A stretch of DNA of 64,000 nucleotides, taken from Guillardia theta CCMP2712 (Eukaryota; Protista; Cryptophyta). The notes under the pieces are model-generated. The model was not told the DNA's origin. It saw only the letters and a list, made by a program, of their open reading frames with translations, and did no database searches. Both the position numbers and the translations under genes were made by a program. The stretch's first letter is position 1. Each line of letters begins with the position of its first letter. The DNA is taken from the NCBI RefSeq assembly GCF_000315625.1, contig NW_005434670.1, positions 806,016 through 870,015 on the forward strand, read 5' to 3'. Of the stretch, positions 33,173 through 37,918 are shown one piece after another.

Positions 33173-35268
33173 AAGTAAGTGCAGGAAGTGCAGGAAGAGG
33201 AAAAACAGGTAGCAGTGGGATCGAGGCAGGACAAGGAGCAGAGGGGGAGGGGGGAGAGAAGGAGGGGAAGACAGTCAGAACACCATGGCTCCATCTCTTT
33301 CCAGGATCGCTCACGCTGTCACCATCACGATCGAGTGGTTCTGTCCGAACTCCATCCTCGGGGACGCCGGCAGCCCCTCGGCATTCTTGCAAGCATCTAC
33401 AGGACGATCAAGTCGCAACCCTCCCCCCCCTCCGCTCTCACCCCGCAGATCTCCCCCGAGACAGTCGCCCGACTGCGCCGTCGTCCTCGCAACGCACGTT
33501 GAGTTGACTCGGATGTACCCGCTAGACGAGCTCGTCAGCGCCTCGCTCCCACTGCCCGTCGACTCACTCGTTACATCTCCAGGGGCACACTGGGCACCCG
33601 TCTCCCGGTCCTCCTGGCCCCATCCTCTCACTCCTCCCCTCCTCTGCCACCGCAACGCACCAGGTCCGCTGTAGTTGGCGTTGTCAGGCTGTACAAGTCA
33701 CACCAGTCAGTCCCCCATCTGCTGCCTGCCGGCCGCTGGTCATACCAGGGAGTTGCCACATCTAGAGCACTGAGATCCGTCCTTGTAGTACCCGCTCATA
33801 CACGTCCACCCGCACGCATTCCTGCAGCATCAGCACACGAGGGTCACGAGCAAACCAAAACTCATTCGCGCTCACGAGTCGTAAGGGATGCCTGGAGGGG
33901 GGCAGTCAGCAAACCGCCAGCAACAACCCTCAGCCCCATCATCAAGGATCACCGGGGGAGCTGTAAACAGAGTTCTCCGGCTTGGAGTTGGTGCAGGCGG
34001 TGCAAACTCCGTCATGAGTCTCGTTGCAGGCGGTCCTGCCGGAACAGCTCAGCACAACACGGAGGTCGTCCGCGTCCCAGGACGTGAGCACCTGAAGTGA
34101 CCGACGGGACAAGGAGCAGTGGTGCAGTTGACGCACTGTCCCAGCTGTTCAACCGTGCAAACGTTCAGCAGACGGCGGGAAACAACCCACGAGCATCCCA
34201 CCTCGTTCATCCTGGTGGAGGCGCTGCAGACGTAGGAACAGCTGTCAGGGAGGTTCATCGTGACCTGTCCATATCTCGTCACAGCTCTTGGCATGCATCG
34301 TAAGGTCCCTCATGCCTGGCACGTCGCATTGCGAATGATCGCAACGTTCCTCTCGAGTGAAAAGCACGAGTAGCTGAAACCCCAGGCTGTCTTCAGCTGA
34401 CTGGACTGGGCATGCTCCGCAATGATCGTGTACAAGGCTCCACGCTGGACAACGAAGGAGCTGGCTAGGACGCGGGTTACGTTCACGAGCTCGTCCTCGA
34501 TCCGGAAAAGCTTCCCCGCAAACTCCGCCGGTACAGTCAGCGAAATAGTACTCCTTAAGTCCGTCCCTAACAGCTGTCCGGGAACATTGAACCCACTGTC
34601 GCTCTACGAGCCATGCCTCGTCAGCGCCTTGAACCATGTTCATGCCTCTCTCACCACATCAGTCGTGCTGTTCACCCCCGAGCTCGTGTACTCGGCCCGC
34701 GAAGGAGCGTTGCGGCACGGCAAGCACTCCCCGTCTTTGATAGCAGTGCAGTTCGAGTAGTAGCCAGTCGGACAAGAGCTGGGAAAGGAAATGGTGTCAG
34801 CTCGACTTTAAAGGACTGGGAACGTTCAGTCGACCTGCAGGGTATGCAGCTGGAGTCTGTGACGTCCTTGTATGTTCCAAAAGGGCATGGGACGCACCCC
34901 TGTCCGTCCTCGAAGTACCCTGGGACGCACACGCAGTCGGTCAAGTTGGTGCTGCCTGCCGGGGCGGAGGTGAAGGCAGGACATGGCAGACACTCAGTCC
35001 CGTTGTAGTAGGTGTTCTCGCCACAGGAGGAGGACAAGAGCCTCCTCTCAGTCCCCGTCGTGCCAGCCTGCGATTCCGCTTTTTTTGCCGATCGTTTCCC
35101 TCTTAACAAGCTTCTCACTTGTGAGAACGGTTTCCATCGCCCTTGCCTGTCTGCCTGCACGTCTCCCATGCCTCCTCCCTTCGTCTCATCAGCGTCAGCT
35201 GCTCCTGTCAACGCCAACGCCGCCAACGCGGCCACAGCCAACATACTCCTGACCGCCCACCACCGCAT
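31764..35268 (-). CDS. Secreted or cell-surface cysteine-rich repeat protein (TNFR/GCC2-GCC3/ephrin-receptor-like repeats), multi-exon
   Basis: Signal peptide MRWWAVRSMLAVAALAALALTGAADA; CLPCPAFTSAPAGSTNLTDCVCVPGYFEDGQGCVPCPFGTYK; further CxxC-rich exons (CVNCTTAPCPVGHFRCS, CNETHDGVCTACTNSKPENS). Confidence 0.75.
32340..33170. repeat. (GAG)n, (GAGGAC)n and (GGAGCA)n purine-rich microsatellite tracts within introns
   Basis: Directly visible at about 32450-32610, 32780-32930 and 33082-33170. Confidence 0.9.
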
Positions 35269-35500
35269 TGTCCTTCCCCACCCTTCTGGCCCTACCCGGC
35301 ACATACGAGCACTACCCCTTAATTATCTATCATTTCATCTCTGAAAGTACCGGTACGTAAGATCACCCCACCCATCCTGGAACTGACAACTTTCAGGTTT
35401 GACAAGCGGCTGTTCCTTGGAAGAGCCTCCGGTCTCCCGGGTACTGTGGTTACTTCTAGGTCTACCAGATTCCGCGGTCAACCACCTTGGGACGCAAACG

Positions 35501-37307
35501 ATGGCATCAGTCGTGCTCGTGACAGGAGGAGCGCGAAGCGGGAAGAGCGGTAAGAGGAGGAGAAGATGGAGAGAGGTGGAGGGGGAAGGAGTGGAAGAGA
35601 CGAGATGATGGGATCAAGAGGAGGAGAGGAGGACAGGACGTTTAATCGCGACTGAGAGATGATCGCGAGCTGGGATCGTCGCCATGGCTGGCAAGAGTTG
35701 CTGATTTGCTCGCAGGCTATGCTCAGAAGTTCTGTGAGAAGATCTGTGAGCAACCAGTATATGTAGCGACTGCTAAGGTCTGGGACAAGGAGATGAAGGA
35801 GCGCATCTCAAAGTAAGCGGCTTCAATCCTGATATGCCACATCTCAGGCATTAACCTGCATGCGCAGGCACGTTGCCGACCGGGGTCCGAACTGGAAGAC
35901 AATAGAATGCAACCTGAATCTCAGTGAGAATGTAAACCTCCGATCTTCATCCACATTCCTGCTGGAGGCGCCTTGTTGATACCTTTCCAGGCTGAGCAGT
36001 TCAGCGGTAAAGCTGTAATGGTCGACTGCCTGACGTTGTGGTTGACAAACTTCTTCCTGGAGGAGGGAGCGTAAGTGTTGTTGATGTTACGGAGACCCGA
36101 TGACAGTCTGATCAGCTTCTCGATGCCCAAGACTGACGATGAGAACGTGACTGTGAGCAGCGACACGAAGGCTTCAGAGCTGGTAGGACTCATCCTGCTC
36201 CTTTGCCCTCTTGACTGTGCCCAGGCCTTGCAGAAGGTGAAACAAGAGTTTGACAAGCTCGTCTCGCAGTGGGATGTTACCTTCGTCAGTGCTCCCAACC
36301 ATAGGCGCCGGTCTCTCACAGCACTGTCAGGTGTTTGTGACGAATGAGATCGGTTCCGGAGTTCATCCCGAACACACCATGAGCCGGGCCTTCGTTGATT
36401 GCCAGGTCTCCCTGATCACTCTGCCTCCTCCGCTGACTGGGAAGGAAGGGATGGCTCAACCAACATGTCTCAGCCCGTGCAGACAGAGTTGTGCACATGG
36501 TCGCGGGCCAACCACACATGATCAAGGTAGACCTCCCTGCTCTCGCGCTCTGCGTCATACATCTGCAGCAACCGAGGCCTGTTGATGTTCCGTGCTTCTT
36601 GCCTCTCGATGCAGAGATGAAGATTGAACAAGCAAGCTTGGATCAGGTTGGTGAACAATTGTGTTCTAAAACCAGCTCATGCCCTGCACCGACAGCTCTT
36701 ATCTACCCGAAGGATGCAGATGGAGCCTGAAGGTAACCTTCACTCGGATGCTCGCCGTGTCTTCCTTGCACTTGTCCTTGATCCTCCTCCCCCTCACAGG
36801 ATATTTCCTGGTGAGCGTCGACAGGAACATTCATCGGATCTGTGCCGAGTGAGCTTGCAACTCGTTGGCAGCTACTGTCACTGACAGCACCAAGGTTCTA
36901 CTCGTGCATCTTGGACGATCAAGGGCGAGTTTGTGACCTTGAGGGGAACGTGATCCCGTGCGATGTATCTTTCGCATTCTCCCCTGATCCTGCTTGCGAG
37001 CTGAGAGTGCCTTGCAGGCGGACAGGAAGGTCCCGCCGGTCAAGCGCTTCGAGGGGAGGACAGCGAAAGAGCTAGCGGTAAGACAAAGCGACAGTAGATG
37101 TGTATGATGGGCATCGACTGAGTTCTGATAGGTCATGGTGTTCGAGAAGTGGCCTGCTTGCCCCCTCAAGTCGCTCGTGCATGCATCGTGAGCTCCTTGG
37201 CTGCCGTCCCCCCCTCCCGCTGATCGTTGTGGAGCAGATACCTAGGGAGAGAGTTCCAGAAAGCTGAACTTGCCCTCATCCATGGATTCAAGTACGAGCA
37301 GGATTAG
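35501..37307 (+). CDS. cobU: Adenosylcobinamide kinase / adenosylcobinamide-phosphate guanylyltransferase (CobU/CobP) fused to a C-terminal DUF4346-type domain; 15 exons, 329 aa
   Basis: Exons 35501-35549, 35716-35812, 35868-35931, 35991-36070, 36116-36182, 36225-36284, 36331-36405, 36449-36526, 36569-36646, 36696-36732, 36800-36848, 36895-36964, 37018-37077, 37132-37187 and 37238-37307 total 990 nt in frame, all introns GT-AG. CobU motifs: LVTGGARSGKS, YVATA, EMKERISKHVADRG, VDCLTLWLTN, FVTNEIGSG, FVDCQGWLNQ, ADRVVHMVAGQP. DUF4346-like: EPEGYFLV...FEGRTAKEL...HASYLGREFQKAELAL...YEQD. Confidence 0.9.
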
Positions 37308-37918
37308 TCCTGTGCGATCCCATGCAATGCTGTCTGGTGCCGACCCATCGCCAGGGATTGAGAGCAGATCTTAGATTGAGGAAGAAGAATGAGGAGGGAG
37401 GGAGGGAGGGAGGGAGGGAGGACAAGGACAAGGACAAGGACAAGGACAAGGACAAGGACAAGGACAAGGAGGAAGTGGAGGAGGAGGAGCTCTTTCCTCG
37501 TCGTCCTCCTCGTTGATATCTTGCTCGTCCATGCTCTGCTACCATACCAAGTCCGAACCAACAAGTTTGACAACGAAGAAAATAAAAGTGGGGCCCCACC
37601 CCTACCATGTCTTCATTTGAAGAACCCCTGAAAGGAGTAATAGAATGGAGGGTATAGACTTGAAGTAGAGTACCCCCTACCCCACCAGTAGGTCAAAGAC
37701 CTCCGATCCAACATGGTATGAAGAGGGAAGGAAGGGAGGAGATGGAGGCGAGCGTCTCGCTGATGTCAGACGGCTTTGTTTGCATGCTGTCGATCAAGAT
37801 GCCACAAGTTGGGTAGACCGAGGGGAGAGGAGAGCCGTTGGCTGCGATAGCAACAAACCTCTCAAGCATGTTCGGGGATGAATGATGTATGGTACATGCA
37901 CCTCGATAGAGTTGGAGA

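What the first reader, a model, noticed from the sequence alone, without database searches (positions are those of the whole stretch)
35501..37307. Hidden 15-exon eukaryotic CobU-DUF4346 fusion: candidate algal cobamide salvage/remodelling protein that links an uncharacterised domain to B12 metabolism
Seen: 15 short exons splice through canonical GT-AG introns into one 329-aa frame that the ORF track misses. The first ~190 aa carry the CobU motifs, including the P-loop GGARSGKS and the RIxxHxxxR histidine. With no stop in between, the last ~115 aa match the short cyanobacterial-type DUF4346 protein as I recall it (LD..LS.R......GYFL...ICA......D..G...D..G..IPC...F.GRTAKEL....FE....CP...L.HA.YLGREFQ.AE.AL..G..Y.QD). 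Established: CobU/CobP activates cobinamide during nucleotide-loop assembly and forms a His-GMP intermediate; eukaryotes do not make B12 de novo, but some microalgae remodel cyanobacterial pseudocobalamin; DUF4346 is uncharacterised and also occurs fused to MtrA-like and pterin-binding proteins in prokaryotes. Inference: the fusion is a Rosetta-stone clue that DUF4346 binds or processes corrinoids, for example handing cobinamide to CobU or helping remove the lower ligand. The dense introns point to an old, integrated gene of bacterial origin rather than contamination.
Basis: partly seen in the sequence, partly recalled or inferred. Interest (0 to 1): 0.85.

Follow-up and report, generated by a model that had tools for sequence, protein, structure and literature searches.

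The report
Algal CobU enzyme fused to DUF4346
This is a real, expressed 15-exon gene of the cryptophyte alga Guillardia theta that joins the vitamin-B12 salvage enzyme CobU to a domain of unknown function; the gene is already in public databases and diatoms and a haptophyte share the fusion, but nobody has explained the extra domain.

Summary
Spliced transcript contigs from three studies remove exactly 14 GT..AG introns and join 15 exons (window 35501-37307, + strand) into one 329-aa reading frame.

- **Domains.** Residues 1-191 are a full CobU: P-loop, invariant His50, NCBIfam equivalog score above cut-off, and a fold match to solved CobU structures. Residues 207-329 are a full copy of the cyanobacterial stand-alone DUF4346 protein (43% identity; Pfam 71.7 bits).
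- **Not hidden.** The window is Guillardia theta CCMP2712, and the identical 329-aa model is public (XP_005841134.1, UniProt L1K0R9).
- **Distribution.** The same fusion occurs in many diatoms and in the haptophyte Phaeocystis. The DUF4346 parts of the fusions form one clade, so the fusion probably arose once, in a eukaryote.
- **Pathway.** The genome also has CbiZ+CbiB, CobS, CobT, a PduO-type adenosyltransferase and METH. METE was not found. A role in cobamide salvage and remodelling is well supported.
- **DUF4346 and corrinoids.** The claim that DUF4346 handles corrinoids is neither supported nor excluded. I found no cob neighbours, no B12 riboswitch, no known fold, and many unrelated fusion partners.

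Interest is moderate.

The parts
35501..37307 (+). Whole coding region of GUITHDRAFT_100401: 15 exons, 14 introns, a 329-aa product, and stop codon TAG at 37305-37307.
   Evidence: Spliced contigs in three runs; assembly and translation; identical to P0269 = XP_005841134.1.
35501..35549 (+). Exon 1: start codon and P-loop GGARSGKS (aa 1-17). No targeting peptide. No in-frame ATG lies upstream.
   Evidence: The transcript contigs begin at about 35495-35501.
35716..35812 (+). Exon 2 (aa 17-49), CobU.
   Evidence: Junctions; Pfam CobU positions 14-45.
35868..35931 (+). Exon 3 (aa 49-70), which holds the invariant His50 of the RIxxHxxxR motif.
   Evidence: His50 is invariant in 90 fusion proteins.
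35991..36070 (+). Exon 4 (aa 71-97), CobU, with the DCLTLWLTN motif.
   Evidence: Pfam CobU positions 70-94.
36116..36182 (+). Exon 5 (aa 97-119), a variable insert of CobU.
   Evidence: Junctions 36070/36116 and 36182/36225.
36225..36284 (+). Exon 6 (aa 120-139), CobU.
36331..36405 (+). Exon 7 (aa 140-164), CobU, with the VTNEIGSG motif.
   Evidence: Pfam CobU positions 118-144.
36449..36526 (+). Exon 8 (aa 165-190), the end of the CobU domain.
   Evidence: Pfam CobU positions 142-166.
36569..36646 (+). Exon 9 (aa 191-216): the linker and the start of the DUF4346 module. The alignment to cyanobacterial proteins starts at aa 207, about nt 36617.
   Evidence: The 42-nt intron before this exon is confirmed; alignment.
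36696..36732 (+). Exon 10 (aa 217-229), DUF4346.
36800..36848 (+). Exon 11 (aa 229-245), DUF4346, with the GYF strand.
36895..36964 (+). Exon 12 (aa 245-268), DUF4346.
37018..37077 (+). Exon 13 (aa 269-288), DUF4346, with the GRTAKE motif.
37132..37187 (+). Exon 14 (aa 289-307), DUF4346, with the invariant His305.
37238..37307 (+). Exon 15 (aa 307-329 plus stop), DUF4346, with the YLGRE...Y.QD C-terminus.
   Evidence: Pfam PF14251 positions 64-86 at 26.6 bits on this exon alone.

Best explanation
This is the nuclear gene GUITHDRAFT_100401 of Guillardia theta.

Shown: the gene is transcribed and spliced as one mRNA, and it encodes a 329-aa protein without a targeting peptide, so the protein is probably cytosolic.

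Strongly inferred from homology: the N-terminal 190 aa are a complete bifunctional adenosylcobinamide kinase / adenosylcobinamide-phosphate guanylyltransferase (CobU/CobP). This enzyme uses its P-loop and the invariant His50 (a guanylyl-histidine intermediate) to turn adenosylcobinamide, or its phosphate, into adenosylcobinamide-GDP.

Inferred from gene content: the enzyme works in a corrinoid salvage and remodelling route of this B12-dependent alga. A PduO-type adenosyltransferase comes first, then CbiZ+CbiB strip and rebuild the aminopropanol arm, then CobU acts, and then CobS joins the lower-ligand riboside phosphate made by CobT.

Inferred: the C-terminal 123 aa are a full copy of the stand-alone cyanobacterial/algal DUF4346 protein, fused once in a eukaryote to a CobU of proteobacterial type. 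I take it to be a small ligand-binding accessory module serving the guanylyltransferase step. My preferred ligand is the guanine-nucleotide part (GTP, or the GDP of the product), at about 0.3, because most other DUF4346 partners handle guanine- or pterin-type rings. Corrinoid binding is the next option, at about 0.2.
For: Gene and transcript:
- One spliced contig spans all 15 exons in three studies.
- The translation is identical to XP_005841134.1, which lies on a 1.28-Mb contig.

CobU part:
- 34% identity to E. coli CobU over its whole length, E 9e-29.
- NCBIfam equivalog NF004469 scores 172 bits against a cut-off of 161.
- Pfam CobU scores 116.8 bits even on the N-truncated model.
- Matches to solved CobU structures reach E 9e-29 by sequence and TM 0.85-0.86 by fold (1c9k, 9vit).
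- The P-loop and His50 are invariant in 90 fusion proteins.

Pathway genes in the same genome: CobS, CobT, CbiZ and CbiB in one frame, a PduO-type adenosyltransferase, METH present and METE not found.

DUF4346 part:
- 43% identity, E 2e-32, end to end with 127-aa cyanobacterial proteins.
- PF14251 scores 71.7 bits against a cut-off of 29.6.
- The family-invariant residues are kept.

Fusion:
- All 120 best relatives carry both domains, in diatoms and in the haptophyte Phaeocystis.
- The DUF parts of the fusions form one clade, SH-aLRT 97, next to eukaryotic stand-alone forms.
- The CobU part is nearer to proteobacterial CobU (34-35% identity) than to cyanobacterial CobU (29%).
- The full-length AlphaFold model has pLDDT 91.7 and pTM 0.84, which suggests the two domains pack in a fixed way.

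Other DUF4346 partners: DHPS-like pterin-binding, ThyA-like, MtrA-like, HGPRT-like, NUDIX and ferredoxin.
Against: - No enzyme activity was measured.
- A CobC-type phosphatase and the source of aminopropanol phosphate were not looked for.
- The ligand of DUF4346 is pure inference. There is no solved or recognisable fold (best Z 6.2, within background), no motif of a known nucleotide or B12 pocket, and the coordinates of the model could not be inspected.
- The runs are labelled RNA only by guess, and the one run of raw RNA reads laid a single read.
- The tree rests on about 120 columns, and the nodes around the fusion clade have weak support (77, 68, 38).
Confidence: 0.55

Rival explanations
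1. One reading: DUF4346 is a corrinoid-binding or corrinoid-processing module. It would hold base-less corrinoids such as cobinamide, for instance through its invariant histidine, and hand them to CobU, or it would help remove the lower ligand. The stand-alone cyanobacterial protein would do the same in pseudocobalamin synthesis.
For: - The fusion to CobU has been conserved in three algal phyla with all family-invariant residues kept.
- MtrA-like proteins, which belong to a corrinoid-binding family, are another partner.
- All 58 DUF4346-positive genomes in the cyanobacterial sample also have CobS.
- Among named Viridiplantae hits only algae appear, and no land plant.
- The fusion joins genes of different origin, which argues that selection favoured the link.
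Against: - No cob gene lies next to the stand-alone gene in the four cyanobacterial neighbourhoods read. The recurring neighbour, seen in three of them, is a FemAB-like acyltransferase.
- No cobalamin riboswitch was found in six loci.
- Ten CobS-positive genomes of the phylum lack DUF4346; within the sample the domain tracks the photosynthetic class.
- There is no resemblance to known B12-binding folds.
- The HGPRT-like, NUDIX, ThyA-like and DHPS-like partners have no obvious link to corrinoids.
- Most cobamide-making bacteria, E. coli among them, have CobU without DUF4346.
Confidence: 0.2
2. DUF4346 binds no small molecule. It would be a docking or oligomerisation module that tethers CobU to a partner, for example the membrane enzymes CobS or CbiB, or that stabilises the CobU trimer.
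For: - It is a small, compact alpha/beta module always placed at the extreme C-terminus of very different enzymes, and it ends in a conserved Y.QD.
- The full-length model has a high pTM, suggesting fixed packing against CobU.
- Weak structural resemblance, Z about 4-6, is to PH/EVH1-like and ribosomal adaptor folds.
Against: - The invariant residues are polar and charged (His, Tyr, Arg, Glu), which looks more like a ligand site than an interface.
- A stand-alone form is universal in the sampled photosynthetic cyanobacteria, so the domain has a function of its own.
- The structural matches are within background.
Confidence: 0.15
3. The fusion has no functional meaning for B12. DUF4346 would keep an unrelated cyanobacterial/plastid-type job, and it merely became joined to CobU by a neutral gene fusion that was then inherited or passed between algae.
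For: - In cyanobacteria DUF4346 tracks the photosynthetic class rather than cobamide genes.
- In three of the four neighbourhoods read it sits beside a FemAB-like gene.
- Its fusion partners are heterogeneous.
Against: - Retention across diatoms, a haptophyte and a cryptophyte at only 45-54% overall identity, with the invariant residues and the reading frame kept, indicates long purifying selection on the two-domain form.
- A domain made for the plastid would be mislocalised on a protein that has no transit peptide.
Confidence: 0.08
4. Artefact: either bacterial contamination, or two neighbouring genes wrongly joined.
For: Both halves have prokaryotic relatives.
Against: - Fourteen spliceosomal introns are removed in transcripts.
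- One contig runs across the domain boundary in three studies.
- The gene lies on a 1.28-Mb nuclear contig.
- No intron-free copy was found elsewhere in the genome.
Confidence: 0.01

Closest known systems
CobU of Salmonella enterica / E. coli, and CobP of Pseudomonas denitrificans (bifunctional adenosylcobinamide kinase / guanylyltransferase; PDB 1cbu, 1c9k)
   Same: - Full-length homology at 34% identity.
- The same P-loop and the same conserved histidine.
- The NCBIfam equivalog score is above its cut-off.
- The same fold, TM about 0.85.
   Different: - The algal protein carries an extra 123-aa C-terminal DUF4346 module and a roughly 20-aa insert (exon 5).
- It is encoded by a 15-exon nuclear gene.
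- The bacterial enzymes are stand-alone proteins of about 180 aa.
Diatom CobU/CobP genes described as bacterial horizontal transfers (Vancaester et al. 2020, bioRxiv 10.1101/2020.01.24.918219)
   Same: - They are the closest relatives, at 45-54% identity over the full length, with the same two-domain architecture.
- They come with the same companion genes, including a CbiZ+CbiB fusion.
   Different: - The passages of that paper that I read name CobU/CobP but not its DUF4346 domain.
- The present gene extends the fusion to a cryptophyte.
Stand-alone DUF4346 proteins of cyanobacteria (about 127 aa), and their N-terminally extended homologues in green and streptophyte algae
   Same: - End-to-end alignment at 43% identity.
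- The same invariant residues and the same Y.QD C-terminus.
   Different: - Here the domain is fused to CobU and lacks the N-terminal extension of the algal stand-alone forms.
- The function of the stand-alone protein is unknown.
Prokaryotic enzymes with a C-terminal DUF4346: the archaeal DHPS-like protein TIGR00284, MtrA-like+ThyA-like+DUF4346 (about 500 aa, cyanobacteria), and HGPRT-like, NUDIX and ferredoxin fusions
   Same: The same domain sits at the same C-terminal position.
   Different: The catalytic partner differs in each case. None of these proteins is a cobamide-loop enzyme, and only MtrA-like belongs to a corrinoid-binding family.
CobY (the archaeal, non-orthologous guanylyltransferase) and the Thermus CobQ-CobU fusion
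   Same: They act at the same pathway step. Thermus shows that CobU tolerates fusion.
   Different: CobY is an unrelated fold and was not detected here. The Thermus fusion partner is the preceding pathway enzyme, not a domain of unknown function.

Membership tests
CobU/CobP (PF02283; NCBIfam NF004469) | The profile score is above the curated cut-off over the whole domain. | tested here: met
   NF004469 scores 172 bits against a cut-off of 161 on P0269. PF02283 scores 116.8 bits against 27 on the N-truncated copy. Exon-wise hits are collinear.
CobU/CobP (PF02283; NCBIfam NF004469) | A Walker-A P-loop lies at the N-terminus. | tested here: met
   GGARSGKS at aa 9-16; invariant in 90 fusion proteins.
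CobU/CobP (PF02283; NCBIfam NF004469) | A conserved histidine that forms the guanylyl-enzyme intermediate (RIxxHxxxR). | tested here: met
   R46..H50..R54 aligns with the HH pair of E. coli CobU. H50 is invariant. That this histidine is the guanylylation site rests on my knowledge of the Salmonella enzyme.
CobU/CobP (PF02283; NCBIfam NF004469) | The CobU (RecA-like) fold. | tested here: met
   Foldseek E 1.5e-15; TM by target 0.85-0.86 to 9vit, 9vis and 1c9k. The model has pLDDT 91.7.
CobU/CobP (PF02283; NCBIfam NF004469) | Kinase and guanylyltransferase activity; a homotrimer. | not testable with these tools
   This needs enzyme assays or complementation.
DUF4346 (PF14251, 'PterinBD-DUF4346') | The profile score is above the curated cut-off. 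| tested here: met
   71.7 bits against a cut-off of 29.6, profile positions 2-86 of 86.
DUF4346 (PF14251, 'PterinBD-DUF4346') | Full-length similarity to the stand-alone protein, the family-invariant residues, and the C-terminal Y.QD. | tested here: met
   aa 207-329 against residues 3-127 of a 127-aa cyanobacterial protein: 43% identity, E 2e-32. A284, H305, Y308, G310, R311, E312 and E317 are kept.
CbiZ-type cobamide remodelling pathway | CbiZ, CbiB, CobU, CobS and a lower-ligand phosphoribosyltransferase (CobT) are present in the same genome. | tested here: met
   CbiZ 154 bits, CbiB 254 bits, CobS 140 bits, CobT exon-wise up to 37.9 bits. CobC was not searched. Activity is not testable here.
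Known B12-binding domains (for example PF02310, the DxHxxG type), taken as a model for a corrinoid-binding DUF4346 | Sequence or fold similarity to a known corrinoid-binding module. | tested here: not met
   Pfam finds only PF14251 on this part. There is no PDB sequence hit. No fold match rises above background, and none is to a B12-binding domain. This lowers the claim 'is a known B12-binding domain', not the claim 'binds corrinoids'.

The most novel reading that the evidence does not exclude
DUF4346 is an unrecognised component of cobamide nucleotide-loop assembly. The stand-alone protein is universal in the sampled oxygenic cyanobacteria, which make pseudocobalamin yet mostly lack CobT (Helliwell 2016). 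It would supply a missing step or hand-off there, such as presenting the purine riboside phosphate or the GDP-activated corrinoid. Algae would have welded it to CobU for the same reason.
Probability: 0.15. Interest if true: 0.8.

Novelty: new variant of a known kind. Interest (0 to 1): 0.5.

Why it matters
More than half of the microalgal species surveyed need B12 (Helliwell 2016), and how they salvage or remodel the corrinoids made by bacteria and cyanobacteria is only partly known.

- **Pathway.** This gene shows that a cryptophyte has the full CbiZ+CbiB / CobU / CobS / CobT set, not only COBT and COBS. Its CobU is the same fused form as in diatoms and a haptophyte.
- **A lead on DUF4346.** The fusion was made in a eukaryote from genes of two different origins and has been kept for a long time. 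It is the only functional lead so far for DUF4346, a small domain found in every photosynthetic cyanobacterium sampled.
- **Testability.** If the lead holds, it assigns a function to a widespread unknown domain and points to a new step or control point in cobamide loop assembly. The test is simple: complementation, plus binding assays with and without the domain.

Tried and rejected
**Getting the spliced protein into the search tools**
- I did not type the spliced protein into any tool. At first I tried to reach it through exon references.
- An alignment of a bacterial CobU with the exon rows was misplaced by MAFFT and gave a 66-position profile, so I dropped it.
- The genome search would not take a locus as its centre.
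- What worked:
  - A cyanobacterial 16S pattern gave genome handles.
  - Those handles gave stand-alone DUF4346 genes.
  - An exhaustive profile search with those genes returned the window's own protein and its relatives.

**Searches that gave nothing usable**
- Complex prediction of Chlorogloeopsis CobU with its stand-alone DUF4346 returned 'no answer' (score 0.00). This is evidence neither for nor against binding.
- Fold searches of the DUF4346 model found nothing above background: Foldseek PDB had no hit at E <= 0.001, and VIA-align gave a best Z of 6.2.
- The feature search in the ESM Atlas, leaving out PF14251, found nothing.
- Rfam on six DUF4346 loci gave no hit.
- Paper searches for DUF4346, PF14251 and IPR025595 returned zero papers.
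- The raw RNA-seq run X18 laid only one read, so strand, transcript ends and expression level could not be judged.

**Distance between DUF4346 and CobS in cyanobacterial genomes**
- One genome has them 3.6 kb apart. In the others where both lie on one contig they are tens of kilobases to megabases apart. I judged the one close pair to be chance.

**Readings I rejected**
- Contamination.
- Two separate genes.
- A longer N-terminus with a targeting peptide: there is no upstream in-frame ATG, and the contigs start at about 35495.
Full report
**Observation**

The region 35501-37307 has no long ORF. Joining fifteen short exons through fourteen GT..AG introns gives a 990-nt reading frame of 329 codons plus TAG.

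I laid four public runs on 35251-37385. Three runs from three different studies (X1, X5, X9) each hold one contig of 1049-1084 nt that skips exactly these fourteen introns, which are 42-166 nt long. Each contig runs from about 35495 to beyond 37385.

The runs are labelled RNA only by guess. However, an intron-free copy was not found anywhere in the genome, so the contigs must come from spliced RNA. The one raw RNA-seq run laid a single read and adds nothing.

There is no in-frame ATG upstream of 35501, and the contigs start within a few bases of it. The protein therefore begins directly with the P-loop.

**Identity of the gene**

An exhaustive profile search with cyanobacterial DUF4346 proteins returned P0062, which is 100% identical to residues 43-329 of my translation. 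Its cluster contains P0269, 329 aa, letter-for-letter my protein.

P0269 is XP_005841134.1 / EKX54154.1, 'hypothetical protein GUITHDRAFT_100401' of Guillardia theta CCMP2712, and UniRef L1K0R9 'Adenosylcobinamide kinase'. It lies on a 1.28-Mb contig.

The gene is therefore real, but it is not hidden. The exact model and both Pfam domains are already on record. The MMETSP model (P0062) is N-terminally truncated and lacks the P-loop.

**The CobU half**

- Residues 4-184 align with all of E. coli CobU (34% identity, E 9e-29).
- The NCBIfam equivalog model for the bifunctional kinase/guanylyltransferase scores 172 bits against a cut-off of 161.
- Solved CobU structures are the only PDB sequence hits.
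- The AlphaFold model (pLDDT 91.7) superposes on them with a TM-score of up to 0.86.
- The P-loop (aa 9-16), His50 of the RIxxHxxxR motif and the other motif residues are invariant in 90 fusion proteins.
- This half is nearer to proteobacterial CobU (34-35% identity) than to cyanobacterial CobU (29%). That agrees with the bacterial-transfer origin proposed for diatom CobU/CobP.

**The DUF4346 half**

- Residues 207-329 align end to end with the 127-aa stand-alone proteins of Chlorogloeopsis, Calothrix, Scytonema and Trichodesmium (38-45% identity, E down to 2e-32).
- PF14251 scores 71.7 bits against a cut-off of 29.6.
- The family-invariant residues are kept: Ala-Lys of the TAKE motif, His, Tyr, Gly-Arg-Glu and Glu of the last helix, and the C-terminal Y.QD.
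- The domain model (pLDDT 93) is helix, three or four strands, then two helices.
- It matches nothing in the PDB above background. Foldseek found no hit at E <= 0.001. VIA-align gave a best Z of 6.2, to ribosomal and PH-like folds.

**Distribution and origin of the fusion**

- All 120 best relatives of the G. theta protein, and of a diatom homologue, carry both domains. They include Thalassiosira, Cyclostephanos, Discostella, Skeletonema, Nitzschia, Seminavis, Ditylum, Amphora and the haptophyte Phaeocystis antarctica.
- Nearly all start at the P-loop.
- The ESM Atlas cluster with this architecture is 96% eukaryotic.
- In a tree of 229 DUF4346 domains, the fusion domains form one clade (SH-aLRT 97). 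The clade's other members are fragments of fusions, plus one possible stand-alone haptophyte form. It sits beside eukaryotic stand-alone proteins that have N-terminal extensions, including green algae, but the nodes there are weak.
- The simplest reading is a single fusion, made in a eukaryote, of a CobU of proteobacterial type with a DUF4346 of plastid/cyanobacterial type. It was then inherited or passed among algae with red-type plastids.

**Pathway context in G. theta**

The genome also has:
- CobS, on the same contig;
- a multi-exon CobT;
- CbiZ and CbiB in one frame on contig 15, most likely the same CbiZ+CbiB fusion reported for diatoms;
- a PduO-type adenosyltransferase;
- METH.

METE and CobA/BtuR were not found.

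Helliwell et al. 2016 found no cbiZ or cbiB in the algal genomes they analysed. G. theta, like several diatoms, does have them. A role for this CobU in salvaging cobinamide-type corrinoids and in remodelling is therefore well grounded, though untested.

**Does the fusion tell us what DUF4346 does?**

1. *Co-occurrence.* I sampled 151 genomes of the phylum Cyanobacteriota. DUF4346 is in 58, CobS in 68 and a photosystem reaction-centre gene in 55.
   - All 55 photosynthetic genomes have DUF4346.
   - All 58 DUF4346 genomes have CobS.
   - Ten CobS-positive, non-photosynthetic genomes lack DUF4346.
   - The domain therefore tracks the oxygenic class, and it is not needed for cobamide synthesis as such.
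2. *Neighbourhood.* In Chlorogloeopsis, Chamaesiphon and Cyanobium the gene follows a FemAB-like acyltransferase. In Geminocystis it does not. No cob gene is adjacent in any of them. Distances to CobS and CobU are tens of kilobases to megabases, with one exception at 3.6 kb that I judge to be chance.
3. *Regulation.* No cobalamin riboswitch, or any other Rfam family, was found in six loci.
4. *Partners.* DUF4346 also ends DHPS-like pterin-binding proteins (archaea), MtrA-like and ThyA-like proteins, an HGPRT-like phosphoribosyltransferase, a NUDIX hydrolase, a ferredoxin and others.
   - CobU and MtrA point to corrinoids.
   - DHPS-like, ThyA-like, HGPRT-like, MutT-like NUDIX and CobU (which uses GTP) all handle guanine- or pterin-type rings, a theme that covers more of the partners.
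5. *Plants.* Named stand-alone hits in Viridiplantae are all algae: Klebsormidium, Chara, Mesotaenium, Spirogloea, Mesostigma, Ulva, Bryopsis, Parachlorella and Botryococcus. No land plant appears among them. This fits a cofactor that land plants gave up, but it is weak evidence.
6. *Binding.* A binding prediction for cyanobacterial CobU with its stand-alone DUF4346 gave no answer.

**Verdict**

The link between DUF4346 and CobU is real and under selection.

What the domain binds or does remains open. I prefer a ligand-binding accessory role at the guanylyltransferase step, with the guanine-nucleotide moiety somewhat more likely than the corrinoid ring. A docking role and a functionally neutral fusion are the remaining rivals.

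The architecture is catalogued in databases. In the literature I could search, it is neither named nor discussed.

Noticed in passing
G000 contig C15:72248-73975 (loci L144, L145): CbiZ (154 bits) and CbiB (254 bits) lie in the same reading frame, 250 nt apart, with one TGA inside the CbiZ match. This is probably a CbiZ+CbiB fusion gene with an intron, as reported for diatoms. Helliwell 2016 found no cbiZ or cbiB in the algal genomes they analysed.
   Followed up: partly
G000 C4:227707-228498 (L139); C108:75156-76855 (L140-L143); C58:466892-467621; C43:461675-462650: The same genome has CobS (apparently intron-free over the domain), a multi-exon CobT, a PduO-type adenosyltransferase and METH. 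METE and CobA/BtuR were not found. The gene content is that of a B12 auxotroph with a full loop-assembly set.
   Followed up: partly
L134:1969-3144 (-), L154:3248-4432, L155:3818-5035: In three distant cyanobacteria a FemAB-like/Acetyltransf_6 gene (PF04339) lies directly upstream of the stand-alone DUF4346 gene, and in Cyanobium the two overlap. This recurring gene pair of unknown meaning may be a better clue to the domain's native role than the CobU fusion.
   Followed up: partly
L138:1471-2994 (-), with about 27 similar loci: About half of the sampled photosynthetic cyanobacteria carry a second DUF4346 gene. It encodes a protein of about 500 aa with an MtrA-like N-terminus, a ThyA-like middle (methanogen-type thymidylate synthase model, 131 bits, below its cut-off) and a DUF4346 end.
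   Followed up: partly
L150:8001-9044 and L151:8001-8825: Cyanobacterial HGPRT-like+DUF4346 and NUDIX+DUF4346 fusions. The NUDIX fusion sits beside carboxysome and RuBisCO genes.
   Followed up: partly
L012:1034-3052 (Thermus thermophilus HB27 plasmid pTT27): The CobU match lies inside a 672-aa gene annotated as cobyric acid synthase, which makes it a CobQ-CobU fusion.
   Followed up: no
window 37393-37470: A compound microsatellite, (GGGA)n followed by (GGACAA)n, starts about 85 nt after the stop codon, probably in the 3' UTR or just beyond it.
   Followed up: no
window 35495-35501: The transcript contigs of three runs begin at most about 6 nt before the start codon. Either the 5' UTR is very short or the assemblies are incomplete at the 5' end. 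No spliced-leader-like overhang was reported.
   Followed up: no
window 34672-35304 (-): A 210-aa cysteine-rich ORF on the opposite strand ends about 200 nt upstream of the CobU start. It may be an exon of a divergently transcribed neighbour.
   Followed up: no
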